Below, piece after piece: positions 4,541 to 31,402 of a stretch of DNA of 33,437 nucleotides. A model generated the notes under the pieces. That model did not search any database. It was not told the origin of the DNA and saw only the letters and a program-made list of their open reading frames with translations. The position numbers were made by a program, and so were the translations under genes. Every line of letters begins with the position of its first letter. The first letter of the stretch is position 1. The DNA is from Octopus bimaculoides (lineage: Eukaryota), in contig NC_068982.1 in the NCBI RefSeq assembly GCF_001194135.2, positions 45,297,653-45,331,089 on the forward strand. The letters run 5' to 3'.

Positions 4541-6082
4541 AGGGAGACAAAATAAAAAAGGTTTAGTTTCTAACGATCTATCAGGGCGAATGCCGGACAG
4601 AAGGGTCACACAGGAGAGCTAGGAAGAAGGGGAGATAATAAAATTGTGGTGATCCCAAATCGAAGGTGCGCGTGCGTGTGTATGTGCGTGCGGAAGGGGG
4701 CTGGTGATCTTGACGTGTGCGTGTGTGCATGTATAGGTGTGTGGATGATGGTGTGGGTGCTTGGAAGTGGTCAGTTCTAGTGTGATGTGGTGTGGTATAG
4801 TGGTGTGTGGTGTGGTGGTGTGGTGGTGTGTGGTGTGGTGTGATAGTGTTGCGGTCTGGGGTAGGCGGGAGTGAGAGAAGCAAGGGTGGAGTGTAAGGGA
4901 TGGGATGTAAGGAATGGGTGAGGTAGGATGGGATGTATAGGGATGGTGGGGTTGGAATGTGTAAGGGTAGGGTAACGAGGGAGGGGTGACGATGAAGGGA
5001 GAGTGTGGAAGGGGGAAGGTGGGTAGGAGAGAAGAAGGGAAGTAGGTGTCAGAGTAAGAGAGGAGAGGTGGGTGGGAGGAAGTAGTTGTGAGAGGAAGAG
5101 AGGAGAGAGGAGGAGGATTAGATGAAGAGGGGAGGAGAGTTGAACCCATGTGGCGCAAAGGAGTGAAGAGAGAAGATTAATCCCTGTTCACGGCGAAGAC
5201 GGGAGTCCGGATGGCCCCTGTGCAAGGACAATCCGAACACAGGCAGGTGTTGTAAAGAATGACCGGTAGAGAAGAAATGGCGCGAGACCGGGGTGTCGTT
5301 GCCGAGTCTGATGTCTCGGAGGTGTTCCGCGAACCGGTCAGCCAAGCGGCGTCCCGTTTGACCGAGGACAGAGAGAGCAGGAGACGCAGTAGATGACGTT
5401 GCAGAAGTGCAGGTAAAGAAGTCAGTGNNNNNNNNNNNNNNNNNNNNNNNNNNNNNNNNNNNNNNNNNNNNNNNNNNNNNNNNNNNNNNNNNNNNNNNNN
5501 NNNNNNNNNNNNNNNNNNNNNNNNNNNNNNNNNNNNNNNNNNNNNNNNNNNNNNNNNNNNNNNNNNNNNNNNNNNNNNNNNNNNNNNNNNNNNNNNNNNN
5601 NNNNNNNNNNNNNNNNNNNNNNNNNNNNNNNNNNNNNNNNNNNNNNNNNNNNNNNNNNNNNNNNNNNNNNNNNNNNNNNNNNNNNNNNNNNNNNNNNNNN
5701 NNNNNNNNNNNNNNNNNNNNNNNNNNNNNNNNNNNNNNNNNNNNNNNNNNNNNNNNNNNNNNNNNNNNNNNNNNNNNNNNNNNNNNNNNNNNNNNNNNNN
5801 NNNNNNNNNNNNNNNNNNNNNNNNNNNNNNNNNNNNNNNNNNNNNNNNNNNNNNNNNNNNNNNNNNNNNNNNNNNNNNNNNNNNNNNNNNNNNNNNNNNN
5901 NNNNNNNNNNNNNNNNNNNNNNNNNNNNNGGCGGTGTGGATAGTGGTGAGGGGATATCCACGTAGTATGATGTGGCGAACCATGAATTGAGACTGAATCT
6001 CAAAGTCATGGTCGTCACTGCAGAGCCTGCGTAGACGGAGGAATTGGGAATAGGAGATGGAGAGCTTGGTATGTTTAGGGTG
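4541..6082 (-). mobile_element. Penelope-like element fragment (RT C-terminal region, GIY-YIG, low-complexity 3' region), spanning an N-gap
   Basis: Minus-strand HTKLSISYSQFLRLRRLCSDD...RGYP (5930-6080). After the gap: FTCTSA / VIYCVSCSLC / GQTGRRLADRFAEHLRDIR...REQGLIFSLHSFAPHGFN* (frameshifted, YIG codons deleted). A C/T-rich and (CACAC)n 3' tract follows. Confidence 0.85.
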
Positions 6083-6550
6083 GGGGGGAGGAGAAGTTGA
6101 GGTATGAGTGTGAGTCTGTGTGTTTGTAGTGGATGGAGGTGGTGAGAGTGGAATGATGAATACTGAACCAAATAAAAAAACAACCTTAAAATGAACAAAC
6201 AAGAAAAGGAAAATAATTAATCAAAGTTGGTTTTACATACTCTTTCCTACCCGACTTAATTGCAGCTGATAAAGTTCGAAGAACCCCTATCAGACCAATT
6301 TGCTAAGACGGTCTTTTGGTGGGGGTTGGTAAGCGGTGTTACAAATTAGACAGTTTTGAGTTGCAAACGTCACTATACGAGTGACAGAAAATGCAGACTG
6401 ATTATGTGGACCAGAAGAAAGGGAAATGATATGTTGCAAGATTTATGTTAAGACTAATTAACAGAGTAAATTGGAAAATTATTTAAGTTGTACTAAGATG
6501 GAATCTATGTTTTAACTTCTAAAAATAACGAATTATTTTAAGTATTTTTT

Positions 6551-6700: not shown

Positions 6701-6900
6701 ACTTCCGCCTTAGCGAAGGCAGAGGTATTGTTTTCAGTCATGTTTGTTTGTTTGTTTGTTTGTCTGTGGACAAGATATTTCAAGAACCGCTCGATGGATT
6801 TGGATGAAACTTTCATGGATGTTTAGACGCGTGACTGGCACGAACTGATTAGATTTTGGGATCGATCCACTACTGGACAAGGATTCTGGATTATTTGTTA
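6696..6900 (+). mobile_element. Helentron/Helitron-associated non-autonomous element (HINE/DINE-like) end
   Basis: Hairpin CTTCCGCCTT-AGCG-AAGGCAGAGG, then TATTGTTTTCAGTC, a (GTTT)n microsatellite and CAAGATATTTCAAGAAC...GATGGATTTGGATGAAACTT, the layout known for Helentron-derived non-autonomous elements. Confidence 0.65.
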
Positions 6901-7697
6901 TATTTGCTTTACTTTACATGATTACGATCTTACGTTAACTTTCAAGTTTTTCTCACTTATCTCCCTTTAAGCTGTTTCTAAAGTTTTATTTTCGTTTCTG
7001 TATAATTAATTTTACTCGCGTCTCTATCTTAGTAGAAACTGATGGTTAAAGAAATCAAACTACATAAACAAACGGCAGCAAAACTGTTCAGAAATTAAAT
7101 AACACTAACCTATTTTTATGATATATATATTGTATATTATACATACATGTTAACACTTTACAGTATACTTACATATATGCACAATCTATACCGATATATA
7201 GATGTATGTCTGATTTGTAACACCGTCCTTTGTGAAAAGTCAATTGCTGAAAGTGAAAAGATGTGCATGTAAAGAAAAAGAGTTGTTGAAAGTCTATGTG
7301 AGAGTCTTATGTACGTGCAAAAGTTCATAGACAATGCAAGGTTTGTACGTCGGGACGAGACGAAAAGCGTGTGTGCCGAAAAGGTTGCATGTGCGGGCTT
7401 CCGTATTTTCTTCCAGTTACTTTCCCGGCATGTAGCTGTCAAAATGTTGCGCTTATAGGCTTTCATGGTCGGCGAATACCTTGTGCGTCGGCAGTGTTGC
7501 ATTGTTGTGAAGTGCATCGTAGATTGCATCGCAGTATAGTGCTTTCTGTAGCAGGTCGATGGAGGGTGCATCTTGGTGGTGACGAAGGTTGTCATTAATT
7601 TTCCCTTTGGTTTAGCGACTGTTGATATCCTAGTTCTATAGTTCGAATCATCAAAAGTGCAGCGGCATCTAGCATCAGAAGGTAATAATTCTTTCGC

Positions 7698-7983
7698 TCG
7701 GGGTCACCAGTTGTGACTGTCGGTTCTTGGGAAGGCTGCAATGCTCTTCTTCGGGGTCACCACTTGTAACGATAAAGTTTCTATTTTGTGTAGCGATACC
7801 TGTTATAGTGCAACGTCGAGATTGCCAGTTTGTAACGAGGGAAATTGATTTGTAAACAATATTATGAAATGTCGGAGTCACCAATTGTAACAGTTAGATT
7901 TTAATTAGTGTATTTACCAATTGTAACTGCTAAGATTGATTAGGTACACAATAATATGATATGTCGGAGTCAGCAGTTGTGAC
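7698..7983 (-). repeat. spaced array of six GTYACA + PBS-like (tRNA-Trp complementary) units
   Basis: Plus-strand cores at 7703 GTCACCAGTTGTGAC, 7756 GTCACCACTTGTAAC, 7822 TTGCCAGTTTGTAAC, 7877 GTCACCAATTGTAAC, 7913 TTTACCAATTGTAAC and 7969 GTCAGCAGTTGTGAC. Exact TGGTGACCCCGA on the minus strand at 7698-7709 and 7751-7762. Confidence 0.8.
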
Positions 7984-8199
7984 AATAAAAATTTGTTATA
8001 ATTGTATGTTGTAAGATGGGAAAAATGAACAATGCATGAAGTTTTAAGGAAATATTTATTTACCGTTTCATCACAATACCTTGCCTCGACGGTCAGGTAA
8101 TGATAGATCCAAAAGCATGCGCAGTAAAATGTGTGTTTGTGTCCTCTTCATTGTTTAGTAGTAATTACAGAGAGAGATAGAATGATGTTGTAAGAGAAC

Positions 8200-9245
8200 A
8201 GAATTAGAGCTAGTGAAAGTTGTAGGCTGTAGGACCGTTGTCTCGCAGTTGCTGGCAGTAAACTTAATTTCTCTCGCTGACCATTGTCTTAATAGCTGCA
8301 TTCCTTGTGATCATGATTATAGCAGTCTGATCCACTACATATACCTTTTCACTGAGTTAGTATTCAATGCCTGACCCTGGGCAGCGATGATTAGGTTTTG
8401 AGTTTTCTTTTTTAGGTCACCCTTGCTGACTCACCTCCATGATGCTTCTTGCCTTTTAAGTTTTTAGTTTCACGGTGGAACTGACCATGTAATTCCATGC
8501 GGAGTAGGGTTTATTCTCTCTCGTCGGCTATTTGTGATCGGAATTCATGGGCACTTTCAAATCCATTTTTGGTAAATCCTTCTGCATTAGTAGCATACTA
8601 TAGCAGATCATGTTTGCTGTTTGCCAAATATTCTGCTATGTTTCTTCTTTCGCTTTTGATCCTGTACACTAATCAGCCAACGTCCACCTTTACACCTCTT
8701 CATGTAGAGCCTGTGCACGTTCGCCTTAGGGTGGAGGGTAACATGCTTTGTCATTGTTTTTCTGGTAATGCTATGGAGTTGGTTAATATCCGCTTGTGTC
8801 CATTTCAGGATGGGTGCACTATAGCGGACTACAGCAACTGCCCACATGTTGAGGGCAGTTACAAGGTTCCTTGAGTCGAGTTTTGATTTCAAGAGAAGTT
8901 TGAGGCGCTTCAAATATGCAGTGATGGCTTGTCTTTCATTTCTCTGTGCAAGATATTGTCCAGCTTCTGGATCCCAAGATACTTGTAACCATCATCATCC
9001 GGGTCTTCCATTCTCTTTCCGTTTGGTAATTCTATACCCCTACAATCTGTTCTCCACCCCCCAACCGTTTCAAAGTGAGCACTGCATACTTCGAGATACT
9101 GAATTCCATCCCTATATCCTTGTACATTTGTACAGTCTTAAACAGCCTCTCCATTTCAAGCTCTGTTTTTGCGAACAGTTTTAAATCATTCATGAAGAGA
9201 AGGTGGTTGAGATGAGATCCATTCTTTCTCAGTTCATAGACTTCG
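8200..9245 (-). pseudogene. R4/Dong-clade non-LTR retrotransposon fragment (RT domains 5-7, thumb and downstream)
   Basis: LNHLLFMNDLKLFAK (YMDD-type motif decayed), DIGMEFSISK, LKSKLDSRNLVTALNMWAVAVVRYS...HPKANVHRLYMKRCKGGR, LHGQFHRE, LIIAAQGQAL; frameshifted. Confidence 0.85.
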
Positions 9246-9509: not shown

Positions 9510-9898
9510 TTATTTGTATGCGTGTCTATATGTGTTTGTATTTGTATGTATGTTTGTATTTACGGAGATATACATGTAATTTTATATGTGTACGTTTCGC
9601 AAACTGAACGAAATGTCCAACTTTCGTTACATACTTTTTGCAACGCCAACATTTCACTCTCTCTACCTCTATCTATTTTTTTCCTTTCTCTCTCAAATTT
9701 TCTGTTTCTATTTCTTCTTTTCCCCTTTTTCTTTCTCCCCACCACTTGTTATTCTCTCATTTTTTTCTTTTTGCTTCTTTCGCCTGTAACAACTAACTTG
9801 TGTAAGCATACGCCAGGAGGTTTTGTGCGCGTGCGTATGTGTGTGTGCGTGCATACATATATATGCATTTGTATGTATTTATATTTTGCCTATATATG

Positions 9899-10896
9899 TG
9901 TAGTGAAACTAACACCTCGATCGCCATTACATACAAAACTACCTATCGCCATTAGATACAAAACTGCTATCGCCATTCTTCTCATTTAAATATAAACAAA
10001 CGCGAGCTTAGCAGAGAACCCATTCCTTGTCATCACGTGACTGATTATTATTCGAAGCGGCAACTTCTTCGAACCGTTCCCGCCAGAACGCAAACTGACC
10101 AATCATGGCCCCTAATAAGGTCACGTGATAGAGTATGTTTCTGAAGCCATCGGGAGCCGATAGTTTGTTATAAATAGCTTTAACTCGGCGGCCAAATTCG
10201 TCTCGGTCCAGTTTCTCTTAGAGACTGTNNNNNNNNNNNNNNNNNNNNNNNNNNNNNNNNNNNNNNNNNNNNNNNNNNNNNNNNNNNNNNNNNNNNNNNN
10301 NNNNNNNNNNNNNNNNNNNNNNNNNNNNNNNNNNNNNNNNNNCGTCAACACGACTTACTATGTACACCAAACTAAACCACCGCGGCACATCTCTCTCTCT
10401 TCGATTCTGTTAGGTGACTTAGCTTCACCACGATAATAAACAGACAAGAGATTTCAGCCTGCGATAAACGTCTGTCCTCAAGGCCCTGGCATCGAAGCCA
10501 AAACACAACTAGTGATAAGCTCTGCCAAACGACGAACGACGAACATCTGTATAACAAGAATCACGGCCCGGCATGGATGCCACGACATCACAACTAGTGA
10601 TCAGCTCTGCCACACACAGCCCCAACTCACTTCTTTCACATACAGACTCATACTATTGTGTACTTAAGAGCTGGTATAAAATGCTCACGTGTTATTGACT
10701 CTCTATCTGCTGTAACAACTCACATACACATACATGTATCACTCACATACATACTTTTCTTTGTACGACGGCCTGTCTTTGATTATGTTCTTATATGTCG
10801 CATTCACAATCTCACATAGACATACATCTTTTACGCCACAATAAATATCTCTGTTATTCATCTTATACGGTTGTGGTCTTTCATTACTGGTCATCA
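9899..10896 (+). mobile_element. LTR-like unit 1 (contains N-gap)
   Basis: Starts TGTAGTG and ends GTCATCA (TG...CA). Contains 24-25-bp internal tandem repeats (ATCGCCATTAGATACAAAACT), a CCAAT box, TATAAATAG and a downstream AATAAA. Homologous to 11015-11649. Confidence 0.6.
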
Positions 10897-11014
10897 CTCA
10901 AAAATGGTGACTAAATGCCAGTAATAGACCAACCGTTCTATCAGTCTTTTTCACTACATCTTTTTTCTTTATTTCGTCTGTTTGCCTTCGACAAACCGAC
11001 TGGTGCGAGGCTAG

Positions 11015-11649
11015 TGTAGTGAAACTAACATCTCGATCGCCATTACATACAAAACTACCTATCGCCATTAGATACAAAACTGCTATCGCCATTCTTCTCA
11101 TTTAAATATAAATAAACGCGAGCGTAGCGGAGAACATCTCCTTGTCATCACGTGACTGATCATTATTCGAATCGGCAACTTCTTCGAACCGTTCCCGCCA
11201 GAACCGAAACTGACCAATCACAGCCCTTAATAAGGTCACGTGATAGTGTTTTTCTACTCCCGTCTGGGAGCCCCCTTAACGCCTTAAATAGATCAACTTA
11301 TACCCAGCAAATTGGTCTCGGTTCAGTTCTCTTTGAGATCTGTTCCGTGTACCACACGACAGCAGCAGCAACAATCAGCCAGCGAGCCAGCGACACATCA
11401 ACAGCTTCGTCCAGCCAACGATGANNNNNNNNNNTGCTCACGTGTTACTGACTCTTTCTATCTGCTGTAATAACTCACATACACATACATGTATCACTCA
11501 CATACACACTTTTCTCTGTATGACGGCCTGTCTTTGATTATGTTCTTATATGTCGCATTCACACTCTCACACAGACATACACTTTAATGCCACAATAAAT
11601 ATCTCTGTTATTCATCTCATACGGTTGTGGTCTTTCATTACTGGTCATC
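11015..11649 (+). mobile_element. LTR-like unit 2 (contains short N-gap)
   Basis: Same TGTAGTGAAACTAAC start; shares the first ~240 bp and last ~210 bp with unit 1; ends CTGGTCATC. Confidence 0.6.
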
Positions 11650-12330: not shown

Positions 12331-12487
12331 TTGCATATAACTTTGTCTTGCTCCATTCTAAACAAAACTGTCCGACGAACGGGAACGTGAAACTCTGAGT
12401 AACAGTTTTTGTGATATATTTGCTGCTTTTTAATAAAGTATATATACATTTGAATGGTGTACAATGAACTTGCCGCGAGGAGTGGAA

Positions 12488-12758: not shown

Positions 12759-13265
12759 TTAAGAGGAAGTGAAAGGATGAAAGGAAAAACGTTCATTCAT
12801 ACCTGTTGGGGACATAGTTTCAAGATCAAATATGAGACGTTGCTCCTTTCGTTTCCAATAGAAGGGGAATCCGTGGTGAAAGGCCATACCACACACTGAT
12901 AAATCTGCAATAGTATGATTCGCAGTGTTGAAGTGGATGGCGACAGGTTGGCCTGGCATACGAAGCATTATGCCTCGGATGTGTTCGCAAAAACGATCCC
13001 CAAGGCGTCGCCCTGTCTGTCCAATGTAAAGAGCACCGCAGAGTTTGCATACAATGCAATATATAAGAGTCGCCGAAGTGCAACAGAAGCGGTGTGTTAT
13101 GTGATATTGCTTCTTGGGCCCCGTAATGGTGGTAATATTGCTGATGTAGGGGCATGTGTTACATCGTCGGCGAGAACATTTAAAAGTTCCTGGTTGTGCG
13201 GAGCTGGGAGCTGTGAAGCTTCTAACAAGGAGATTTCTAAGACTCCTATCTTTTTTAAAAGACAA
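12759..13265 (-). CDS. GIY-YIG endonuclease domain of a Penelope-like element (uninterrupted, not a host gene)
   Basis: CSRRRCNTCPYI linker, FCCTSATLIYCIVCKLCGALYIGQTGRRLGDRFCEH, KEQRLIFDLETMSPTGMN. Confidence 0.85.
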   Translation of the reverse strand: MSFKKDRSLRNLLVRSFTAPSSAQPGTFKCSRRRCNTCPYISNITTITGPKKQYHITHRFCCTSATLIYCIVCKLCGALYIGQTGRRLGDRFCEHIRGIMLRMPGQPVAIHFNTANHTIADLSVCGMAFHHGFPFYWKRKEQRLIFDLETMSPTGMNERFSFHPFTSS

Positions 13266-13532
13266 GAGAGGCGGTGTGGAAAAGATAGGGGCAGTTGTTG
13301 GGTCAGAAAGAAGAATGCGAAAGTTGTGGGTGAGTTTGTGCGTTAGAGGGAGGATGGACGGGTGGCAGATGAGAAAGAGTGGGATGCGGTCGGTGGAAGT
13401 GCGTGAAGATGGTAGGAAAGCTGCGGTGCGGTTGATGGCTTCGGCTCAGTGGAGTGCCGAGTCGACAACTGATGGAGGATACCCTCAATTTAGAAAAAAA
13501 ACTGTTGGATTAATATATATATATATATATAC

Positions 13533-13940
13533 TACCCAGTTCAACTCATAGAGGAAGGAATCAGACGTGCATCACAAATTAACATAGAAAACTTAAGAAA
13601 AGTTAAACACAGCAGCACACATTCCCCGAAAATACTACCGTACATATCCACATACAACCCCAGAAACAAAGAAGCCTTCACCATCATCACCCAAAACATA
13701 CCAATGCTACATAAGGACCCCAAATTGAAGGAAATTTTACACACACACAAAATCATCAAAAGCCACAAACAACCAAAATCACTGAAAAAGATCCTCACAA
13801 AGGCAAAATTACTTTCCGAAACAACAGATGCGAAAGTAAACAAATGTGGTCGACCAAATTGTGCAACATGCCCAAACATTCTAGAAGGTTCAGAATTCCT
13901 CTTCAAAGAGGGACACAAATTCAAAGTTAAATCTAACTTT
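13533..13940 (+). pseudogene. Penelope-like element fragment (pre-endonuclease linker), runs into N-gap
   Basis: Open frame YPVQLIEEGIRRASQI...ILPYISTYNPRN...SHKQPKSLKKILTKAK...KCGRPNCATCPNI...FKVKSNF. Confidence 0.85.
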
Positions 13941-20624: not shown

Positions 20625-21245
20625 CAGGGTGCTTAAGATATTTGAGGACAGATTTATGTTTATAAAAAAGCAGATACATAATAAGAGATGATAACTTTAT
20701 TATTAAAAATGCTTTGAGGATAAAAATAAACCTTTTTTTTCTATAATGTTGTTCAATAAAGCCACCTTCAACTTCAATAACTGCTTCTATACAAGCTCTA
20801 AATCGTCTACATGCTCGAATCAAGTGGTCCTGGTTCATTTCAGACATTACTCAGACTATGGCGGATTTTAAAGAATCTTTAGTGTTATGGGCGTGTTCAT
20901 TGACCTTTCTCTCAATAACGCTCCACATGTAATAGCCCAATGGATTAAGATCTGGGGAATTTGGAGGCTAAATGTTAGGTGTTATGTGATCATGAAAATT
21001 TTCAGCCATCCATTCCTGCGTTACTTGAGCCTTGTGTAATTGTTCAGAGTCTTTCTGAAACACATATGAGCTTCCATTCATTGCGTATACTGTCTGTGCA
21101 GGGCTTAACAACTGTTTCCAAGACCTTAATGTAGGCGACAGCGTTAACTCTAAGGCCTTGTGGAAAGAAGTAAGGAGGCATCACATGTCCTTCACTGCTG
21201 ACAACCCCTAAGATCATGACAGTTGCAGGACATTTCTGTGAGGCA
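20625..21245 (-). pseudogene. Tc1/mariner maT (DD37D) transposon, 3' half with TIR
   Basis: PATVMILGVVSSEGHVMPPYFFPQGLRVNAVAYIKVLETVVKP; FQKDSEQLH...I*PPNSPDLNPLG has 37 residues between the second D and the third catalytic position (mutated to G). TIR CAGGGTG at 20625. Confidence 0.85.
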
Positions 21246-21326
21246 CATTTTGGAGACGAGGGTCTTGAGCACTCCTCAAGCTTTGCTCGACGCTCTGAAA
21301 GCAAAACTGCACCAGGAATGGGCTTC
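21246..21326 (+). mobile_element. short maT fragment, inverted relative to neighbours
   Basis: Matches the reverse complement of 21800-21877. Confidence 0.8.
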
Positions 21327-21597
21327 AGAAGAGTCTGCACATAACCATCTGTCATTTCTTCCGTTAACTTTATAATCTTAGTCGAAGTTTTTGTCTGAGA
21401 GAAACCAAATCAAATCTACTGGATTTTTCATTCTGTTTAAGAGCCTTTTAGTTTTGATGTAGCGATTTTCTTTTGCTTTTTCTGACATAAATTGACCTTT
21501 CCTCATCATATTTGGGTGGCGGGGTGGGGATGACTATCCCGAAATATAACAACGTATATATTTATCTATTATATATGTGCGCGTGTGTATGTATAAA

Positions 21598-22815
21598 TAG
21601 GGTGTCCCAAAATTAAGGAAACCAACTTTTTTCAATTTTGTCAAAGCAAAATATTGTAATATTTCGGGTCCGAGCGTAGCAATGCAATGCTAAAGGAAAC
21701 ACAATTATGGCACTACCGGTTTTATTCGATATGACCACCTGTGTTTCGAATCAAAGCCTTAAGTCTTCACACACGACACGCAGCCGTTCTTGCGTAATCG
21801 AAGCCCATTCCTGGCGGAGTTTTGTCAGAACGTCGAGCAAAGCATGAGACGTGCTCGAGACCCTCGTCTCCAAAATGGACCAAACAGAAAAATTCAACGG
21901 GTTGAGATCAAGGCTTCTTGAGGGCCATACATCTTTGCCTATGAACGACGGAATGTTTTCGTGAATCCAGTGTTGTGTCTGTTTGGAGCTGTGGGATGGT
22001 GCCGAGTCCTCTTGAAGGCTTTAAGTTGCGTCTTGAAAATGCTCATTCACCCATGGAAACAGCTCAGCTTCCAGAATGTCGCCAACGAATTGTTAGGTGT
22101 TAATTTTAACACCCGAGGGCACAAACACCCAAACCGTAATTGACTATAGATTTTGGCGTTGATTTGCGAGCAAGATGCACTCCAAAGTCGGTCATTTGAG
22201 TGATTTACTGTCTGTTCGATTTCAAATTTCTTTTCATCAATGAACACCAGGTTAGGCAGCGTGCCTTCAGCTATCTGACACAAGATAAGACGACTTTTCT
22301 CCAGTCTCATGGCCTTATAAACTTGAGTGAGCTCATGACAGTGAATCTTGTAGGGGTGGGTCCTGAGATCTTCCTTCAGTACTCGATACATCGATGTTCG
22401 GCTTATTTTTGCTGTGACAGCCAGTTTTCTGACGGACCGACGAGGATTTCGTCGTATCTTTTATCTGGTACTTTTGATAAAATGAGGCTCCACACACTTC
22501 TTTTTTTGGCCGCGTCCAGGTCGATCAGTGGTGGAACCAGTCTCTTGAAATTTCTTGACAATTTTCCAGACTGTTGTTCAGCTAATTTTAAGCTTTTTTG
22601 CTGTAGCTGTATTACTTTTGCCTCCTTTGTGGAGGGCTATGATTTTACTTCGGTCTATAGCCATTATCTAATTTATAAATCTGAATTCTTTTAGTCTGAA
22701 ACAAAAAGAAGACACACTAAGCTTTCATAATGATGCATAATTTTTATATCTTATCACATTTATAGATAGTTATTAAAACCCGAAACTTCGGTTGCCTTAA
22801 TTTCGGAACACCCTG
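21598..22815 (-). mobile_element. Tc1/mariner maT (DD37D) transposon, both TIRs, decayed transposase
   Basis: 26-bp TIRs TAGGGTGTCCCAAAATTAAGGAAACC / GGTTGCCTTAATTTCGGAACACCCTG (4 mismatches), with TA on the right flank. HTH ISRTTVWKIVKKFQETGS-like, VFIDEKKF, NDRLW, QEDSAPSH-x-SLDLNPLN (37-residue spacing, third D to N). Stops and a probable internal deletion. Confidence 0.9.
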
Positions 22816-24077: not shown

Positions 24078-25212
24078 ATGAAAACTCAGAGCTTAATTTG
24101 CTGGGTATGATGGAAAATGTCAACTGTTCACAGCCAGCAGACTAAGGTGACAATTGTTTACTGGTCATGTTCCAAGAACCCTGCGAAGAATTCTTGCAGT
24201 TCCAAGCAATGATGATTTTTGTAGGTGTTCTACCTTCACACTTACACCGACATTTTTTAGCCATGTTGGTAGTTGAGTGCTGATACTTCAAGTAAAACAA
24301 TTACTATTGGTATTACGTCTACTCTCTTCATTGACCACAACATTCGTATTTCCCACTTTAAATCGTCATAGTTGTTTATTTTTTCTTTTTCTTTCACATT
24401 GATCCTTTTGTCACCGGAGCATGCTATGTCAATTATCATACACGTTCTTTCTTTTTTATTCACCACAACAATGTCCGGTTTCCGATGTCTGATCCGGTGA
24501 TCGCACTGGATCATTGCATCCCACAGGATTTTGCAATTCTCATTTTCGGTGACATCTGGAGTTTACTGATACCACGTCTTTGCTCTTTGTAGGCCGTGAT
24601 TTCCACAGAGCTCCCAATGTATCATTCTTACCACATTGTCAGAGCATCTTTTGTATTCGCGTTGTGCCAATTTCGGGCATTCGCTAACGATGTGCCAAAC
24701 CGTTTCACCCCTCTCACCACATATTCTGCATTTGTCATTATCGGTAGTGTTGTCTATTCTGCACTTCATATAGTTGGCTCTTAACGCTTGTTCCTGAGCT
24801 GCGCATATGAATGCTTCTGTCTCTATCTCCAGGCCATCCTTCCTCATCCATAACCACCGGTCCGCTGTATCTGTCTTGGCGTTTACATCGCTTGCAAACT
24901 GACTGTACATTTTCTTTTCCTTCCACACATTTTGTCTAGTTTTTGTTCATTTTTTGTTAAAACTTTTCTCTAGTTACACAACTTTCACTTTTGATGACGC
25001 CAGCCTTCGTGTTTCAACAGTGACTCCACGGCATTTTTTATATACCACCATAATCTGTTTTCGTCTCCTTCGATACTGTCCTGGCAACTGATCAAGCATC
25101 TTCCACTCTTTCTTCTGGACAAGTACAGCCTATCAGTGTCACTCTTAGGGTGAACTTTTTCATCCAAAATCCCTGTACCTCATCAGGTCCTGCTGCTTTC
25201 CCATTGCTTATC
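24078..25212 (-). mobile_element. R4/Dong-clade LINE 3' portion: CCHC knuckle and restriction-like endonuclease, RT deleted
   Basis: CRICGERGETVWHIVSEC; RKPDIVVVNKKERTCMIIDIAC (PD-D motif); LLGTARILRRVL*; 3' UTR ends at (TAA)n. At the 5' side, KAAGPDEVQGFWMKKF is fused to HPKSDTDRLY. Confidence 0.9.
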
Positions 25213-25520: not shown

Positions 25521-26964
25521 CCCTATGTGATTATCTCTGTTTGCTATTGTCCATCAATCTTCGGCCGCGCTGTCATCTTGCAGTCACAAAAGCACCACGA
25601 AGGTAAACGATTGTCTCCCTTCGGCCTTGGCTATTGGTTTCCGGCTGTAGTGCCACCCTGCAGATTCCCAAAAGCCAGCAGGAATTTTCTGTATAGACAG
25701 TCAATGTATTGTATATCCGAAAAAGAGAACACTCTAAAGCATCCCCAAACGCTTTAGCCTCGCAGACGTCTCGTCAGACTCTAAAACCGAAGACTTTATA
25801 TATATATGAATGATGAATTCTCTCGTCGTGAACGACAAATGAGTGTAAGGTAAAATAAAGCGGTAATCATGTTCTATGGACACACATGTACCTCTTAAGG
25901 CCTGTTGGTGCCTTGCAAACTTTTTAGCAAATGGAACAAGTTGAGGACTCAGTTTATTCGAGTGCTTGTGGATCATTTACTACGTATTTGCTTGAGTGAA
26001 CGGCAAGGCCTGCTTTGCTCCGTGTCACAAAACCACAATGACAGGTAAGGTTTTCACTTAGAGGGGCAGTGTTTTGCCAGCATGCCTTCATGCTTGCACG
26101 AAGTTGTGTGTATGCATGTATGTATATATGTAAACTTTGCTTTTAAACCTTTCGATGTCGGAAAAGCAAGGCAAAATAATTAGCCGAGTGCTGGTGTAAT
26201 CTTTTCATCTTCCTGTCACATCTTGGATGTTTCACTAAGTGAGAAGGCGAAGTGGGTGCCTGTATTTTGCTCGGACCAAATGGGGTCCTCAAAAGAATTA
26301 GTGAAATCATGGTAGATACCATACTAAGCGGTGGTGTAGCGTAGATTTTGGCCTTTCCCTGTTTGGTAGCCAAAACTGACCTCCCACTCACTTCCTTACA
26401 CGTTACACACCTTCTATCAAAGCAATCGTCATCACCAACCCTCAAGTGGCCACCCTGCGCCTACCCGACATACTCACACGCTATAGTGGTGCTGCTACCC
26501 CACGCTATACTACTGCTGCTAAAGTGTAATCGCTTGTAAGTGAAAAGTGTAGTTTTTTTTCTTTTTCTTTTTCTCATGTACGGAGGAGAACATGTTGCGA
26601 AAAAATATCAATGAAACAGAGAAGTTAATTTTGATGGATTATTTTTGACGTGGAGGAGGATAGAAAGAATGAAGTGATTATGCATAACGACGACATTGTG
26701 AGAGGAGGAGGAGGAGGAGGAGGATATTCTATGCTATGAGTTTGTTTTGACGGAATTACAGTCGTAAAAGGAAAATGAATATGTGTATAAATGGTGTCAG
26801 GGATGTATTTACTGTGGTATGTATGTAAATGCATACATACATACATACATAAGCACCGGAAAATATGAAACTCAGAGCTGTTTGCATTTAATGAGACCAT
26901 ATCTCAATGTTTTTGCAGTACCACTGCTACTATCAACATTTGGGATATTGGACAGAACACCAGA

Positions 26965-28200
26965 TGAGATACGCAAAAAGGTACTGACCACCACTGGCAA
27001 CTTCCACATTAACAGCAACACCGATAGGATTTACGTGAGACGAAGCGATGGCGGTAGAGGCATAAAGTCTGTACGAATAGCATTTGAATGTCGCATTGTA
27101 TCACTCAGACAACACCTGCTGTACAGTACAGAAAGAAACGAGTACATTCCATGCATACTCAAAAGTGAGAGCAGCATCTCCAGAGTTGGAGAACTACTGT
27201 GCAGGTACTCCGAGAATACAACTGTCTCATGCGACCCAAAGGTGATTGGGCTGGCTTAACTGAACAGAAGCTTGAAGAAGAAGCAGGCATCATTCCAAAA
27301 ATAAAGCAATGCATGAGTGCATATCCCGTAAGCTAGAGGGTAACAACAGCGTTGACAGGAAGAGTAGCCTCTTCTGGACCTGCGATAGATAGATTTCATC
27401 CCACCTAGAAGAATATACCTTCGCTATCTAGGAATAGGAGATAGCTAATAAATACCCAATAAACAAGAGGGGAAAAATACCTCTAGATCTTCATGTTGTG
27501 ATAAAAAGATGTCGGCTCTGCTACGCCAGTGTTGAAGATATCACCCACATCATCATCAGCTTCTCCACAATGTCTACGAAATATTACCTGCCTTTGAGGC
27601 ATGATATAGTTGAAAAAAAAAAATTACAATGCTATCCACAGGAAGGACTGTTTTAGCGTATACATCAGAACCAGCAGGTATTCACACCTTTAAAAACAAG
27701 GAATACTGGTCGAACATCCCAATAAAAACAACAATTAGGTGCAAACATAACAGACTTGATATTGTTCTGTGAGACGGGAAACAAGTCATGCATTGTTGCA
27801 GAGGTCAGCTACCCAGCACATATGAATGTACAATCAAAAGTCCAGGAAAAAGAGAATATTAATGCGGAATTTCCAGCTCTAGTACAGTGACTATGGATTC
27901 TCATTTGTACCTATTATTATAGGTGCATTAAGTTATGTATCAACAATTTTGTACAAGAACGTGGAAATACTCGGTTTCACATAAAAGGAGCAAACAAAAC
28001 TGATACGGATTCTCCGAATCCAATCTATTAGTGGCACAATGAAGATTTGTAAGACATTCCAAAAATTCTCCATTTGAGATTCTTATGTGAATAGATGCAC
28101 ACACATGCGTATGTGCATCGACCGTTCAGCCAACACACCAACTCAACAACATATTTACAAATACCGGGAACTCTCTTAACTCAATGGAGTCTTGTTGCTT
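26965..28200 (+). pseudogene. R4/Dong-clade LINE 3' fragment, second family, heavily decayed
   Basis: LTTTGNFHINSNTDRIYVRRSDGGRGIKSV; CRLCYASVEDITHII; RHDIV; KHNRLDIVL; many stops and frameshifts. Confidence 0.8.
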
Positions 28201-28351: not shown

Positions 28352-29522
28352 TTACTCGAGTAATTCGTGCCCCTGTTCATCTACCAGAGACCGAATGGTG
28401 GCTTTGTTGCCCTGTTGCGCCTCCGCCACCCAGGCGTCTCGCGCGGCTCCAACACATTCGTTCATTAGAGCACACATCCTAGACCTGACTACACATCCTT
28501 CGTGTTTGGCGTTGAAGTGTTGGTCGAGTGCCAACCTTGCCGCCAAAACGTCGGATGCGATGCCACTTCTAATCGCTTCTTTTAGCTTCTTAACTTGGTC
28601 ACCCTCTACTCTGTTTCTATCTATCACTAGTGCTTTGCTATAGCTAATCGCTTCTGCTTTTATTGCTCTCGAGAGCAAACCACCATTTGTTGTTGATGAT
28701 GGCTCCCGTCAAAGCCCTCTTTACTAGCGTGCTAATCCGGTCTCTGAAAACTTGTCTCGACGGGAAAGACGCGTTTAGTTTCCAGTAACCAGAACCCTGT
28801 CTATGTGTCACATCTAAGTCTAGCGTACACGTCACAAGTTTGTGATCCGTGTAGCTGACTATGTGGAATTGTGGGCACCCTACGCTATCTCTATCTACTG
28901 TCCTGCACAGTATCCCATCTAGATACGATTTCGACGACCCGATACAGTTGTTCCATGTCCACGTTGGCGCATTCGGGTGGTCGAGTCGGTACCTGTCAGA
29001 CAGTTGAAAGCGTCTGAGCAGGTCTCTGAGGCATTTACATCCCCGTCTATTCCTATCTCTGCCCACTTATTCTAGATGCGTGTCCAAGGTAGCATAACAA
29101 TTCCCCACTAAAAGTAAAGGACGAGACCTTCCTAGGAATACTTCTAGACATCGAAAGAAATCCGACCGACCTGTTAAAGGCGGTGCGTAGACTGATACGA
29201 GTCGAAAAGCGCACCCATTGCTACTATCGACATTCAGGACAACCAGTCTACCCTCCGGGTCTACGAATATTGTCTTTACTTCGAGAGCCAGACTCTTCCG
29301 AAAAAGTACTGCTGTGCCACTACCGCCAATTCTCGACATAGAGGAAGAAAAATAAATGTTAAACTGTCCGCCAAACATGGACTTTAGGGCTCGTGGATTA
29401 TGGAGTCTGGTCTCACTTATGGCTATGATTTCTAATTCATGTGACTTTATGTCGTTTAAGAGGTACCCTTGTTTCCAAGGGGACCCCAATCCACGCGCAT
29501 TCACACAACCAATCTTGATCAT
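28352..29522 (-). pseudogene. Tx1/L1-clade LINE ORF2, APE endonuclease and linker; RT absent
   Basis: CVNARGL, ISETRL, VYAP, SYLDGIL, YTDHKLV and GSGYWKLNAS motifs. In-frame stop at 29067-29069 and a frameshift near 28680. Confidence 0.92.
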
Positions 29523-29574
29523 AATCCTAATGATGTGTGTGTTCAAACACTAACGATAGGAACAGAGAGTCATT

Positions 29575-31177
29575 TACCGTTCGAAAGTTTTTGTGTCTCC
29601 TCCTTTGGTTTTTTCCTCGAGGAGATCACTATAAAATTTTTTTGGAAGAGTACTTCTGGCATCTTCCAACCGTATCGGGGTAAATGGATTTTAGTGTGTG
29701 GTGTAGGGTTGGTGTGATGTGCAATATTTTAATGTGTTCTGGTGGTGTTGTGTGGGTGGTTGCTTGTTTTTATGCCTTTGTGTGTCAGGTTTGTTTTTGT
29801 ATTCCATCAACTCTATATTTTTCATGTTGATGGCAGTGAGCATTGTATGTGTGTTTGTTTTTGAAGTGTTGTTGTTGTTGGTGTTGTGTGTGCTAGTGTT
29901 GGTGTTCGAAAAGTTTTGGGGAGTTGTGTATATCCCTGCTTTGTTTGCGTTTGGTTTGGTTCTTTTTTTACTCCTCTTCCTCCTTCCTTTTCTTGCTATT
30001 TGCCATTCCTCACTGCTTTCGTCTTCTGACGAAATTTCTGTGGAATCGGAAGGGGGTAGGGCATTCTGTAAGCTTCTATGTGTGTTTATGTAAGTGGTTG
30101 TGTTGTTGTTTTCGTTGATGTTGGTTGTTGACTGTTTGTGTGTGGTGTATGTGATGTAGGGGAAGGGAAATCAGTTTTTGTATTATCTTTTGGTTTTTCT
30201 GTTTCTTTAGTGGTGGTTATTGTTGTTTTTTTGTGGCAGTCAGACAATCGTTTTTCAAATGTGTTTCACTGTTGCACAGATAACAACGTGACCGCCTGCC
30301 CTCCACCACTACATACAGTTTGTGGCCTTCTGTCAATTCTATGGAGGTGGGTATTTTATTAATTGATGACTGATCAATCTGCAAAAGAATATCACCCAAT
30401 TTTGTTGTTCTAAAATAGCAATTTCTAGGATGTTTATTTTCTCCATCTCGAAACAGATGGCAGATAATTATGTCTCGATTTCCGGAGGCACATTTTGTAT
30501 TGTGACTTTTGTCACTCTCTGGCCTAGATACGTTGGTATCATCACTAACCCATCCGTGTTGAGGGGTCACTGTAGAGAAACGTTTGGCCAGATTTTCGTC
30601 CTGGAATCGGACTTAGACGGTGCCGTATTTGTGCCACCAGTTCACATATTCCTTGTGTGGCCAAACGGAACGAAGGCATTTTTCTATTTTTTGTTGTGGT
30701 GCTTGCTTTGGTCTTTTTGTTTCCATGTCGATAATTTTATAGATGATCGTTCTTTTCTGTGTGTTTTCTAGGATGTTTTTTTGGGATGTGGAGGTGTAAA
30801 TTGTCTCGTTGCGCAGTGAATTTGACTATGGTTCTTTTTTGTTTTATTGCTTCAGCAAAATTTGTTTTGTCCTTGGTGGTGGTGGTGGTGTCGTCGGTGG
30901 CAGAAGAGGCAGTTGTAGCAGTAGAAGTTGTTGTAGTAGTGGTGTTGGTGTTGACGGCAGAGTTGATGTCTTTGGTGGCGGTGATGGTGGATGGTCTTGC
31001 GGCATTAGTTTTGTTGTTGTTGTTGTTGTTGGTGGTGGTGGTGACAGCGACGTTCAAGCTATCAGGTTCACCAGCTAATGGTAGCGGTAAGCTAGGGAAG
31101 TTTTCTTCTGTTGTTTTCAGCGCCTCGCTAGCGTTCCGCATGACATGCGCGCTGGCCTCGTGGTTTCCAGTCGCCAT
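29575..31177 (-). pseudogene. Tx1/L1-clade LINE ORF1 (gag-like, zinc knuckle), disrupted
   Basis: T/N-rich N-terminus, FAEAIK, LYVVVEGRRSRCYLCNSETHLKNDC (CX2CX4HX4C), K/T-rich C-terminus ending just before ORF2; stops and frameshifts. Confidence 0.8.
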
Positions 31178-31402
31178 TTTCGAAATGAAAAATGGCTAAA
31201 ATGAATCCACGAAAGCCTTCAAAATTTTGGAAATTTCGCCCTCCTAGGGGCAAAATTCTATGTAAATATTTATCATGTTTTGAAGTGAATGTTGTTGCAC
31301 AACTTTTAAACACAAAATATTCGACAATAAAACTTTTAAACATGCAAAAATAGCCAACTTACGTGGAGCCCATTTGACTAGCGTCCGTCTAGAAGATAGA
31401 TA

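What the first reader, a model, noticed from the sequence alone, without database searches (positions are those of the whole stretch)
7698..7983. CRISPR-like array of LTR-end/primer-binding-site junctions complementary to tRNA-Trp
Seen, on the minus strand: GTCACA-AC-TGCTGACTCCGACAT, GTTACA-AT-TGGTAAATAC, GTTACA-AT-TGGTGACTCCGACAT, GTTACA-AAC-TGGCAATCTCGACGT, GTTACA-AG-TGGTGACCCCGA and GTCACA-AC-TGGTGACCCCGA, with unit starts 36-66 bp apart. The spacers are mostly unrelated, although those after units 1 and 3 are homologous, so at least one internal duplication occurred. Established: TGGTGACCCCGACGTGAT is the complement of the eukaryotic tRNA-Trp 3' end (the avian leukosis virus PBS), and ...TTACA/...TCACA + 2-3 nt + TGG is the normal 5'LTR-end/PBS junction of Gypsy-type elements. 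Those elements normally carry one such junction. Here two units match 12/12, two match 11-12/13, one matches 11/15 with only transitions, and one matches only TGGT.A. Inference: a multi-PBS cassette. It could supply alternative priming sites, record successively captured U5-PBS junctions (for example from mis-transferred plus-strand strong-stop DNA), or act as a decoy for tRNA-Trp 3' fragments, which are known to silence LTR elements via the PBS in mouse. An alternative is that the cores are GTCAC-N5-GTGAC palindromic protein-binding sites. I know of no description of such an array but cannot search the literature.
Basis: partly seen in the sequence, partly recalled or inferred. Interest (0 to 1): 0.85.

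Follow-up and report, generated by a model that had tools for sequence, protein, structure and literature searches.

The report
Reiterated LTR-end/tRNA-Trp primer-site fossil
A 286-bp stretch of an octopus-type genome holds six head-to-tail copies of the short junction where an LTR retroelement ends and its tRNA-Trp primer-binding site begins; it looks like a dead, decaying retroelement remnant, not a working "CRISPR-like" system, though why only the junction stayed conserved is not settled.

Summary
On the minus strand, 7983 to 7698, six units carry GTYACA, then 2-3 nt, then TGGTGAC(C/T)CCGA. There are 4 hits at ≤1 mismatch against 0.08 expected. The same 20-nt junction occurs in two retroelement-like contigs from unrelated metagenomes. 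One (L009) has the full 18-nt tRNA-Trp site; the other (L006) is a complete 236-bp mini-LTR element. So reading the core as an LTR-end/PBS(Trp) junction holds.

The CRISPR-like and multi-PBS-cassette readings do not hold:
- The window has no LTR pair, no gag/pol and no second copy.
- Two units are badly decayed.
- Units 1-3 are plain duplicates.
- The flanks keep weak in-register similarity.

The upstream LINE fragment stops at 8336 and is unrelated to the array.

One feature remains unexplained. Cores of different unit types are 81% identical but their flanks only 37-39%. Core divergence equals that of the one whole-unit duplicate pair. The cores were therefore uniform, and the flanks already different, when the array formed.

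Best reading: a fossil of an aberrant or variant LTR-retroelement 5' end. Its tRNA-defined junction module was probably re-copied during reverse transcription and has decayed neutrally since.

Interest is modest. A genome-wide BLAST, which I could not run, is decisive.

The parts
7961..7983 (-). Unit 1 core: GTCACA-AC-TGCTGACTCCGAC(AT). PBS match is 11/13.
7910..7927 (-). Unit 2 core, degenerate: GTTACA-AT-TGGTAAATAC. It reads as a type-A unit with an internal deletion, because the tail of its spacer resembles the tail of the unit 1 spacer.
   Evidence: repeat family D3
7869..7891 (-). Unit 3 core: GTTACA-AT-TGGTGACTCCGAC(AT). PBS match is 12/13. The whole unit is a duplicate of unit 1 (51 nt, 80%).
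   Evidence: repeat family D2
7813..7836 (-). Unit 4 core: GTTACA-AAC-TGGCAATCTCGACGT. PBS match is 11/15, with four transitions. It is the only unit that keeps positions 13-15 (CGT).
7751..7770 (-). Unit 5 core: GTTACA-AG-TGGTGACCCCGA. PBS match is 12/12.
7698..7717 (-). Unit 6 core: GTCACA-AC-TGGTGACCCCGA. PBS match is 12/12. The perfect GTCAC-N5-GTGAC palindrome lies here.
7630..7697 (-). Sequence after unit 6. It shows gapped, collinear similarity to the complement of tRNA-Trp beyond the 18-nt PBS, including ACCTTCTGAT (10/10) at 7674-7683, which matches the anticodon-stem/variable-loop region. Suggestive only.
   Evidence: (banded shuffle p=0.002)
7984..8335 (-). Unassigned 352 bp between the LINE breakpoint and unit 1. 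It could be a 5' LTR: it can be read as starting TG (TGTAG...), it ends ...GTCACA, and it has AATAAA at 8055-8060. No second copy exists to prove this.
8336..9239 (-). Context, not part of the array. A 5'- and 3'-truncated fragment of an R2-superfamily (restriction-like endonuclease) LINE. It is 82% identical to a copy in Octopus bimaculoides (L001), and homology stops at 8336.

Best explanation
The array is a dead remnant of the 5' end of an LTR retroelement of Ty3/Gypsy, BEL or TRIM-like type. In the living element, the 3' end of tRNA-Trp (...UCGGGGUCACCA) pairs with TGGTGACCCCGA(CGTGAT) just downstream of the LTR terminus ...GTYACA-NN and primes minus-strand DNA.

Here that junction module occurs six times head to tail. 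The module comprises the last ~6-14 nt of U5, the 2-3 nt linker, and 12-15 nt of PBS. It is exactly the piece defined by the tRNA-linked 5' end of minus-strand DNA. Its downstream edge never exceeds the 18 nt that plus-strand synthesis can copy from the primer.

All cores were still uniform when the array was laid down, while the flanks already differed. I therefore infer that the reiteration arose in a retroelement context. The likeliest route is plus-strand synthesis repeatedly re-copying the tRNA-linked minus-strand end after failed or misaligned second strand transfer, with short template switches supplying the spacers. The aberrant cDNA was then inserted next to a LINE fragment.

Afterwards one ordinary DNA duplication produced units 1-3. 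All units then decayed neutrally by about 10% each, and unit 2 also suffered an internal deletion. Nothing indicates that the array primes, records or decoys anything today.

What is shown and what is inferred:
- Shown: the anatomy, the identity of the junction, the absence of any element around it, and the contrast between core and flank conservation.
- Inferred: the reverse-transcription origin and present inertness.

Nested confidence: retroelement-derived junction relic about 0.8; reiteration made during reverse transcription rather than by later DNA-level events about 0.45.
For: - Six units are present, with 4 hits at ≤1 mismatch against 0.08 expected.
- The identical 20-nt junction occurs in two retroelement-like contigs, L009 and L006. 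The tRNA-Trp complement and the avian retrovirus PBS were verified in papers.
- Plurality bases at PBS positions 13-15 across unit types rebuild CGT, as in the tRNA (and direct reading).
- Cores of different unit types are 81% identical (132/162), while flanks are 37-39% identical in register. Gapped spacer alignments are not significant.
- The whole-unit duplicate pair u1/u3 has core 85% and flank 79% identity, the same divergence as the cores in general. The cores were therefore uniform when the array formed.
- Residual similarity is concentrated next to the core on both sides, as expected if variable lengths of U5 were re-copied.
- The unit 6 flank continues a collinear match to the tRNA beyond 18 nt (p=0.002), which is what primer read-through would give.
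- An abrupt breakpoint at 8336 in the neighbouring LINE marks an insertion or rearrangement boundary 352 bp upstream of unit 1.
Against: - No LTR pair, PPT, target-site duplication or gag/pol is present, so the retroelement context rests on the junction alone.
- I know of no described case of reiterated strong-stop ends of this kind, and literature searches found none.
- The extended tRNA match is seen only in unit 6 and is marginal.
- The host tRNA-Trp could not be examined, because no tRNA genes occur in the window or in L001-L003.
- The origin of the spacers is unknown.
- Only 116 kb of host-type DNA could be searched for other copies, so a multi-copy family, which would favour a functional cassette within an element lineage, cannot be excluded.
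Confidence: 0.45

Rival explanations
1. The array arose in place by DNA-level amplification. A single inserted LTR-end/PBS fragment was multiplied by replication slippage or by fork template-switching at the quasi-palindrome GTCAC-N5-GTGAC. Only short patches containing the junction were copied into neighbouring AT-rich DNA, and the copies then decayed.
For: - Units 1-3 are clearly DNA-level duplicates.
- The core is a (quasi-)palindrome, read directly from the sequence (one search shows hits on both strands).
- The flanks are AT-rich and vary in length, consistent with indels.
- Weak in-register similarity next to the cores fits copied patches of variable extent.
- No other copy of the region was found.
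Against: - Slippage normally copies whole periods, yet here the flanks between unit types are at random-level identity while the cores are 81% identical.
- Nothing explains why every copied patch should stop within the 18-nt PBS limit and keep the CA-NN-TGG junction intact.
- Tandem Repeats Finder does not call the region as a repeat.
Confidence: 0.2
2. The array is or was a selected device. One form is a multi-PBS/att cassette maintained within an active retroelement lineage, offering alternative priming sites, with the PBS refreshed from the tRNA at each replication cycle. Another form is a host-retained platform: a decoy for 3' tRF-Trp, or a set of binding sites for a PBS-recognising repressor or zinc-finger protein. 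This would be analogous to the 12 Su(Hw) sites in the gypsy 5' UTR.
For: - The core-against-flank contrast (81% against 37-39%) is the signature of constraint at some stage.
- The array lies where a 5' leader would begin, 352 bp after a possible LTR start.
- Clusters of multiple plus-strand priming sites (PPTs) are known in Sireviruses.
- Arrays of motifs in the 5' UTR of LTR elements are known (own knowledge: the gypsy insulator).
Against: - Units 2 and 4 are badly mutated.
- Core divergence equals the neutral divergence of the u1/u3 duplicate, so there is no sign of constraint since the array was laid down.
- No element surrounds the array and no other copy was found.
- The region shows no RNA structure signal (z = -0.83).
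- The paired-unit pattern is absent from the JGI metagenome scan.
Confidence: 0.12
3. The resemblance to an LTR/PBS junction is coincidental. The cores are a homotypic cluster of palindromic protein-binding sites, or an internal repeat of an unrelated transposable element or LINE tail.
For: - The core contains GTCAC-N5-GTGAC.
- It also contains a nuclear-receptor-like half site GGGTCA (direct reading).
- A 12-mer match to some tRNA 3' end in a 33-kb window is not very rare on its own.
Against: - Eighteen specified bases (GTTACA..TGGTGACCCCGA) are identical to junctions in retroelement-like contigs. The chance of that in 33 kb is about 1e-6 per pattern.
- The unit consensus extends the tRNA match to 15 nt.
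- LINE homology ends at 8336, and a profile of the LINE C-terminus finds nothing in 6800-8335.
- Intact relatives of the LINE have different 3' ends.
Confidence: 0.05

Closest known systems
Canonical 5' LTR/PBS junction of tRNA-Trp-primed LTR retroelements (avian leukosis/sarcoma viruses; invertebrate Gypsy/BEL-type elements such as the one on contig L009)
   Same: It has a terminal ...CA of U5, a 2-3 nt linker, then TGG... complementary to the tRNA-Trp 3' end including CCA. The 20-nt sequence is identical to L009 and L006.
   Different: Normal elements have one junction, flanked by a full LTR and followed by leader and gag. Here there are six junctions in 286 bp, only about 6-14 nt of U5-like sequence per unit, a PBS of 12-15 nt, and no element around them.
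Tandem arrays of TRIM elements (Cassandra: LTR as tandem unit, internal domain with PBS/PPT as spacer, 12 or more copies; PMC7215508)
   Same: LTR-end/PBS junctions are reiterated head to tail, and the elements are non-coding.
   Different: Cassandra units are complete LTR plus internal domain, hundreds of bp long, and homologous over their whole length. They are made by LTR-LTR recombination. Here units are 36-66 bp with non-alignable flanks.
Clustered multiple polypurine tracts of plant Sireviruses (PMC2829016)
   Same: A reverse-transcription priming site is reiterated within one element.
   Different: Those are plus-strand primers (PPT) next to the 3' LTR. They are conserved across a large active family in plants. 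Here it is the minus-strand primer site, at one decayed locus.
Capture of retrotransposon cDNA at chromosome breaks, and primer-tRNA read-through products (own knowledge: Moore & Haber 1996; Teng, Kim & Gabriel 1996 for Ty1; not checked here)
   Same: Fragments ending at the tRNA-defined cDNA terminus can be patched into the genome without integrase. tRNA sequence beyond the PBS marks a cDNA origin.
   Different: Described captures are single, longer fragments. No six-fold reiteration of the terminus has been reported, to my knowledge.
Gypsy insulator (12 Su(Hw) sites in the 5' UTR just after the PBS; own knowledge)
   Same: About 300 bp at the start of an LTR-element leader is made of conserved short cores separated by divergent AT-rich spacers.
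   Different: There the core is a zinc-finger protein site unrelated to the PBS, and it is present in all copies of an active family.
CRISPR arrays
   Same: There is only a superficial repeat-spacer look.
   Different: This is a eukaryotic locus. The repeats are 75-90% identical, not identical. The spacers are 16-45 nt and of uneven length, some duplicated, with residual homology. There is no leader or cas context.

Membership tests
LTR retroelement 5' end (U5/PBS junction) | LTR terminus ...CA followed by a 2-3 nt linker and TGG | tested here: met
   All six units have GTYACA, then 2-3 nt, then TG(G/C). The sequence is identical to the junctions in L009 and L006.
LTR retroelement 5' end (U5/PBS junction) | At least 12 nt complementary to the 3' end (with CCA) of a host tRNA | tested here: inconclusive
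   Matches to human tRNA-Trp are 12/12 in u5 and u6, and 11-12/13 and 11/15 in the others. The octopus tRNA-Trp gene was not available; no tRNA genes occur in the window or in L001-L003.
LTR retroelement 5' end (U5/PBS junction) | A pair of long terminal direct repeats with PPT and target-site duplication | tested here: not met
   No direct repeat involves 6830-8335 in the window or in L001-L003.
LTR retroelement 5' end (U5/PBS junction) | gag/pol or another internal region downstream of the PBS | tested here: not met
   ORFs downstream have no Pfam match and no homologue.
CRISPR-like repeat-spacer record | Near-identical repeats separated by unique, unrelated spacers of regular length | tested here: not met
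   Cores are 75-90% identical. Spacers are 16-45 nt. The u1/u3 spacers are homologous, and the u2 spacer tail resembles the u1 spacer tail by eye and in repeat family D3. Residual in-register similarity is present in the flanks.
CRISPR-like repeat-spacer record | Spacers match foreign or mobile elements (here, U5 ends of other LTR families) | not testable with these tools
   No octopus genome or repeat library is searchable. The spacers match nothing in the window or in L001-L003.
TRIM/Cassandra-type tandem LTR array | The unit is a complete LTR plus an internal domain with PBS and PPT, homologous across units | tested here: not met
   Units are 36-66 bp, only the junction is conserved, and there is no consistent PPT.
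Ordinary minisatellite / tandem repeat | Head-to-tail copies homologous over the whole period with roughly uniform divergence | tested here: not met
   Tandem Repeats Finder makes no call. Core identity is 81% against 37-39% for the flanks. Only units 1-3 behave as plain duplicates.
3' UTR / tail of the adjacent R2-superfamily LINE | Continuity with the LINE, and presence in other copies of that LINE | tested here: not met
   DNA and profile homology stop at 8336. The L001 copy continues into the zinc-finger and endonuclease region instead. Other copies end in different UTRs plus (AAT)n.
tRNA gene, tRNA pseudogene or tRNA-derived SINE | A cloverleaf or at least most of the tRNA body on the plus strand | tested here: inconclusive
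   ARAGORN and Rfam find nothing. Only unit 6 shows gapped similarity beyond 18 nt (p=0.002). The presence of CCA argues for a copy of mature tRNA or a PBS, not a gene.

The most novel reading that the evidence does not exclude
The six junction cores were kept uniform by selection or by tRNA-templated refreshing, because the array is a working multi-PBS/att cassette of an undescribed retroelement family, or a host-retained platform that binds 3' tRNA-Trp fragments or a PBS-recognising repressor. This locus would then be one recently dead copy of it.
Probability: 0.1. Interest if true: 0.75.

Novelty: new variant of a known kind. Interest (0 to 1): 0.3.

Why it matters
If it is only a fossil, its value is small but real. 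It would be a natural record of an aberrant reverse-transcription product, namely repeated copying of the tRNA-linked cDNA end. It would also show that tRNA-Trp-primed LTR elements lived in a cephalopod genome.

If the cores turn out to be maintained, either in many copies or across species, it would be the first multi-PBS cassette. That would bear on three questions: how retroelements choose primers, how 3' tRNA fragments silence them, and how hosts target the PBS. All three could then be tested with small-RNA and chromatin data from octopus.

Tried and rejected
1. LINE tail. The fragment at 9239-8336 is 82% identical to an O. bimaculoides LINE. Homology ends at 8336, and a C-terminal profile finds nothing further downstream. 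Rejected.
2. Hidden further units. An nhmmer profile of the units finds only the six.
3. LTR pair or second copy. blastn of 7600-8150, 7984-8335 and 6830-7697 against the window and L001-L003 returns only self hits.
4. Coding context. The ORFs across and after the array have no homologues among 5.8 billion proteins, no Pfam family and no record.
5. tRNA or other known RNA. ARAGORN and Rfam (gathering and E≤10) find nothing relevant. Hammerhead/retrozyme and Penelope ideas were dropped for lack of any hit.
6. RNA structure. The fold of the array is no better than shuffles (z = -0.83).
7. Spacers as continuations of the tRNA. Significant only for unit 6.
8. Spacers related to the flanks upstream of u1 or downstream of u6. 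Not significant.
9. Tiny-LTR tandem model, suggested by L006. It would require homologous 28-48-nt 'LTRs' between units; only units 1-3 share them, and there is no consistent PPT. Rejected.
10. Array pattern in public collections. It has 0 hits in JGI metagenomes. The single-junction pattern gave 1 chance hit in a phage gene (L004) and 5 metagenome hits, of which 2 are retroelement-like.
11. Sampling more host DNA through LINE homologues. This gave only one octopus locus (L001). The other two contigs fetched (L002, L003) are ENA contigs of unknown organism.
12. Bacterial promoter/terminator scan. Irrelevant for a eukaryote and uninformative.

Full report
**Context**

The window is TE-rich, gap-containing eukaryotic DNA of octopus type.
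- It holds 2603 N in nine runs.
- It carries cephalopod-style SINE copies that are 92-97% identical to ones in a locus of Octopus bimaculoides chromosome CM046617.1 (L001).
- It carries a LINE fragment 82% identical to a LINE in that same locus.
- The best named protein relative is an O. bimaculoides 'uncharacterized protein' with an RVT_1 domain.
- No tRNA gene and no Rfam family is present.

**Observation**

On the minus strand from 7983 to 7698 there are six units:

| Unit | Sequence |
|---|---|
| u1 | GTCACA-AC-TGCTGACTCCGACAT |
| u2 | GTTACA-AT-TGGTAAATAC |
| u3 | GTTACA-AT-TGGTGACTCCGACAT |
| u4 | GTTACA-AAC-TGGCAATCTCGACGT |
| u5 | GTTACA-AG-TGGTGACCCCGA |
| u6 | GTCACA-AC-TGGTGACCCCGA |

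Unit starts are 56, 36, 55, 66 and 53 bp apart. The pattern GTYACANNTGGTGAC has 4 hits at ≤1 mismatch, all here, against 0.08 expected. A profile built from the units finds no seventh unit anywhere in the window. Tandem Repeats Finder does not call the region.

**What the core is**

The complement of human tRNA-Trp plus CCA is TGGTGACCCCGACGTGATTTGAACACGCAACCTTCTGAT..., as printed for an anticodon-edited human tRNA-Trp. TGGTGACCCCGACGTGAT is used as the PBS primer for chicken ALV/EAV proviruses.

I scanned public collections for the exact 20-nt form GTTACA-NN-TGGTGACCCCGA. Two retroelement-like contigs came back.
- **L009** has the following layout. An ORF whose C-terminus weakly resembles an integrase SH3 domain is followed by a roughly 600-bp stretch ending ...GTTACA. 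Then come TT, the full TGGTGACCCCGACGTGAT, and a 248-aa ORF with DUF7041 and a zinc-knuckle-like end.
- **L006** is a complete 236-bp element. It has two identical 48-bp LTRs (TGTATT...GTTACA), TT, TGGTGACCCCGA, a purine tract before the 3' LTR, and a 5-bp target-site duplication AGGAG.

The other hits (L004, L005, L007, L008) look like chance matches: L004 lies in phage coding DNA, and in all four the tRNA match stops after the 12 specified bases. So the core is an LTR-terminus/linker/PBS(Trp) junction. The GTCAC-N5-GTGAC palindrome is a by-product of GTYACA meeting TGGTGAC. Across the four unit types, the plurality bases at PBS positions 13-15 rebuild CGT, so the ancestral core matched at least 15 nt of the tRNA.

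The host's own tRNA-Trp could not be checked. I rely on the strong conservation of this tRNA among animals (own knowledge).

**What surrounds it**

Upstream on the minus strand lies a LINE fragment (9239-8336). Its relatives carry a CCHC zinc finger and a restriction-like endonuclease of the R2 superfamily. Support for this is a Pfam zf-RVT hit and weak PDB matches only to R2 proteins.

In L001 the LINE continues through these domains to its stop codon. In the window, both DNA homology and a profile of the C-terminal region stop at 8336. Two other LINE copies of this type end in different short UTRs followed by (AAT)n. The array is therefore not a LINE tail.

The 352 bp between the breakpoint and unit 1 match nothing. 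This stretch can be read as starting TG and ending CA, and it holds AATAAA 77 nt before its end. That fits a 5' LTR but is unproven.

Downstream there is no gag/pol. The 145-aa ORF and the ORF across the array have no homologue, no family and no record. No part of 6830-8335 recurs in the window or in L001-L003.

**Relations among units**

- u1 and u3 are whole-unit duplicates: core 17/20, flank 27/34, p<0.001.
- u2 reads as the same type with an internal deletion, from the D3 repeat and direct reading.
- Between the four types (u1-3, u4, u5, u6), gapped spacer alignments are not significant.
- In-register comparison does show residual similarity in the 10-14 nt before GTYACA (p=0.0006) and in the 20 nt after the PBS (p=0.008).

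The key contrast is this: cross-type cores are 81% identical (132/162), while flanks are 37-39% identical. Core divergence is the same as the overall divergence of the u1/u3 duplicate. This means the cores were essentially identical, and the flanks already different, when the array was laid down. Everything has decayed at one rate since then.

After unit 6 the sequence keeps a gapped, collinear similarity to the tRNA complement beyond 18 nt, including ACCTTCTGAT (10/10) at 7674-7683. A banded shuffle gives p=0.002, and the other units show nothing similar. The RNA fold of the array is unremarkable (z = -0.83).

**Mechanism**

The conserved module is the U5 end, the linker, and no more than 18 nt of tRNA copy. 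That is exactly what the tRNA-linked 5' end of minus-strand DNA defines.

I therefore favour an origin during reverse transcription. Plus-strand synthesis would have repeatedly re-copied that end after failed or misaligned second strand transfer, with short template switches supplying the spacers. The product was then inserted beside the LINE fragment, underwent one DNA-level duplication (u1-3), and decayed neutrally. This step is inference.

The main rivals are:
- short-patch duplication in place at the quasi-palindrome;
- a cassette kept uniform by selection or by tRNA-templated refreshing in an active element lineage, or by the host.

The data do not support a CRISPR-like record or present function. 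Two units are ruined. There has been no constraint since formation. No element or second copy is present. The paired-unit pattern is absent from the one large collection I could scan, though that collection is mostly prokaryotic.

**Comparison with known systems**

| Known system | Relation to this array |
|---|---|
| Canonical tRNA-Trp LTR/PBS junction | Same sequence, but normally single |
| Cassandra TRIM tandem arrays | Junctions reiterated, but as whole homologous LTR-plus-internal units |
| Sirevirus multiple PPTs | A priming site is reiterated, but the plus-strand one, in an active family |
| Retrotransposon cDNA capture at breaks; gypsy Su(Hw) site array (own knowledge) | Partial analogies only |

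I found no description of reiterated U5/PBS junctions.

**Verdict**

The most likely reading is a retroelement-derived fossil. Novelty is modest: a new variant of retroelement-derived repeats. Interest is 0.3. There is a roughly 10% chance that it reflects a real multi-PBS device. A genome-wide BLAST and a cross-species comparison would settle that.

Noticed in passing
L006 157-392 (contig JAAUYA010324019.1): A complete LTR element of only 236 bp. It has two identical 48-bp LTRs (TGTATT...GTTACA), TT, a 12-nt tRNA-Trp PBS, the purine tract GGGGAGGGG before the 3' LTR, and a 5-bp target-site duplication AGGAG. [quoted passage not shown] The host organism is unknown.
   Followed up: partly
window 7630-7697 (-): After unit 6, the sequence stays collinear with the complement of tRNA-Trp beyond the 18-nt PBS. 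ACCTTCTGAT (10/10) lies at 7674-7683, and a banded shuffle gives p=0.002. This could reflect primer read-through or an extended primer contact, as in the Ty1 boxes. It is unproven.
   Followed up: partly
window 7967-7991 and 8408-8432: Unit 1 on the plus strand (GAGTCAGCAGTTGTGACAATAAAAA) is 76% complementary to a stretch inside the LINE coding region (GAGTCAGCAAGGGTGACCTAAAAAA on the minus strand, encoding ...SKGDLKK). Probably chance.
   Followed up: no
window 24140-25100 (-), 26768-27256 (+); L001 10160-11650 and 11700-12400: Further copies of R2-superfamily LINEs with a CCHC finger and a restriction-like endonuclease (...RKPDIVV...IDIA...). Two of them end in a short UTR followed by (AAT)n, which suggests R4/Dong-like targeting of TAA repeats. 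One 3' UTR (L001 about 12334-12360) holds a perfect 10-bp hairpin, CAATCACTCG-G-CGAGTGATTG.
   Followed up: partly
window 12762-13445 (-), 5121-5426 (-), 5930-6220 (-), 13494-13940 (+): Fragments of Penelope-like elements: a GIY-YIG endonuclease with an upstream Cys motif (...YIGQTGRRLGDRFCEH...). The Pfam GIY-YIG hit is weak (E=0.018).
   Followed up: partly
window 28355-31195 (-): An AP-endonuclease-type LINE. There is an Exo_endo_phos hit at 29070-29549. Upstream is an ORF1-like region with a CCHC knuckle (30220-30612) and an Asn/Thr-rich low-complexity stretch.
   Followed up: partly
window 21047-22460 (-): A remnant of a Tc1/mariner-like transposase, identified by eye from ...DSAPSHSSK...WPSRSLDLNPLNF.... 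There is no Pfam hit at E≤0.01.
   Followed up: partly
window 9898-10134 vs 11014-11249; 10699-10895 vs 11454-11649: Two pairs of 93-97% identical direct repeats, offset by 1116 and 755 bp and interrupted by N gaps. This may be a recent local duplication or an assembly redundancy. Each copy holds a 25-bp tandem repeat (ATCGCCATTACATACAAAACTACCT).
   Followed up: no
L002, L003 (ENA ERZ25066843, contigs of 1.4-1.5 Mb): An ENA assembly with megabase contigs full of tandem, nearly identical R2-superfamily LINE copies, so it is evidently eukaryotic DNA. Genes there were called with a prokaryote-style ORF caller.
   Followed up: no
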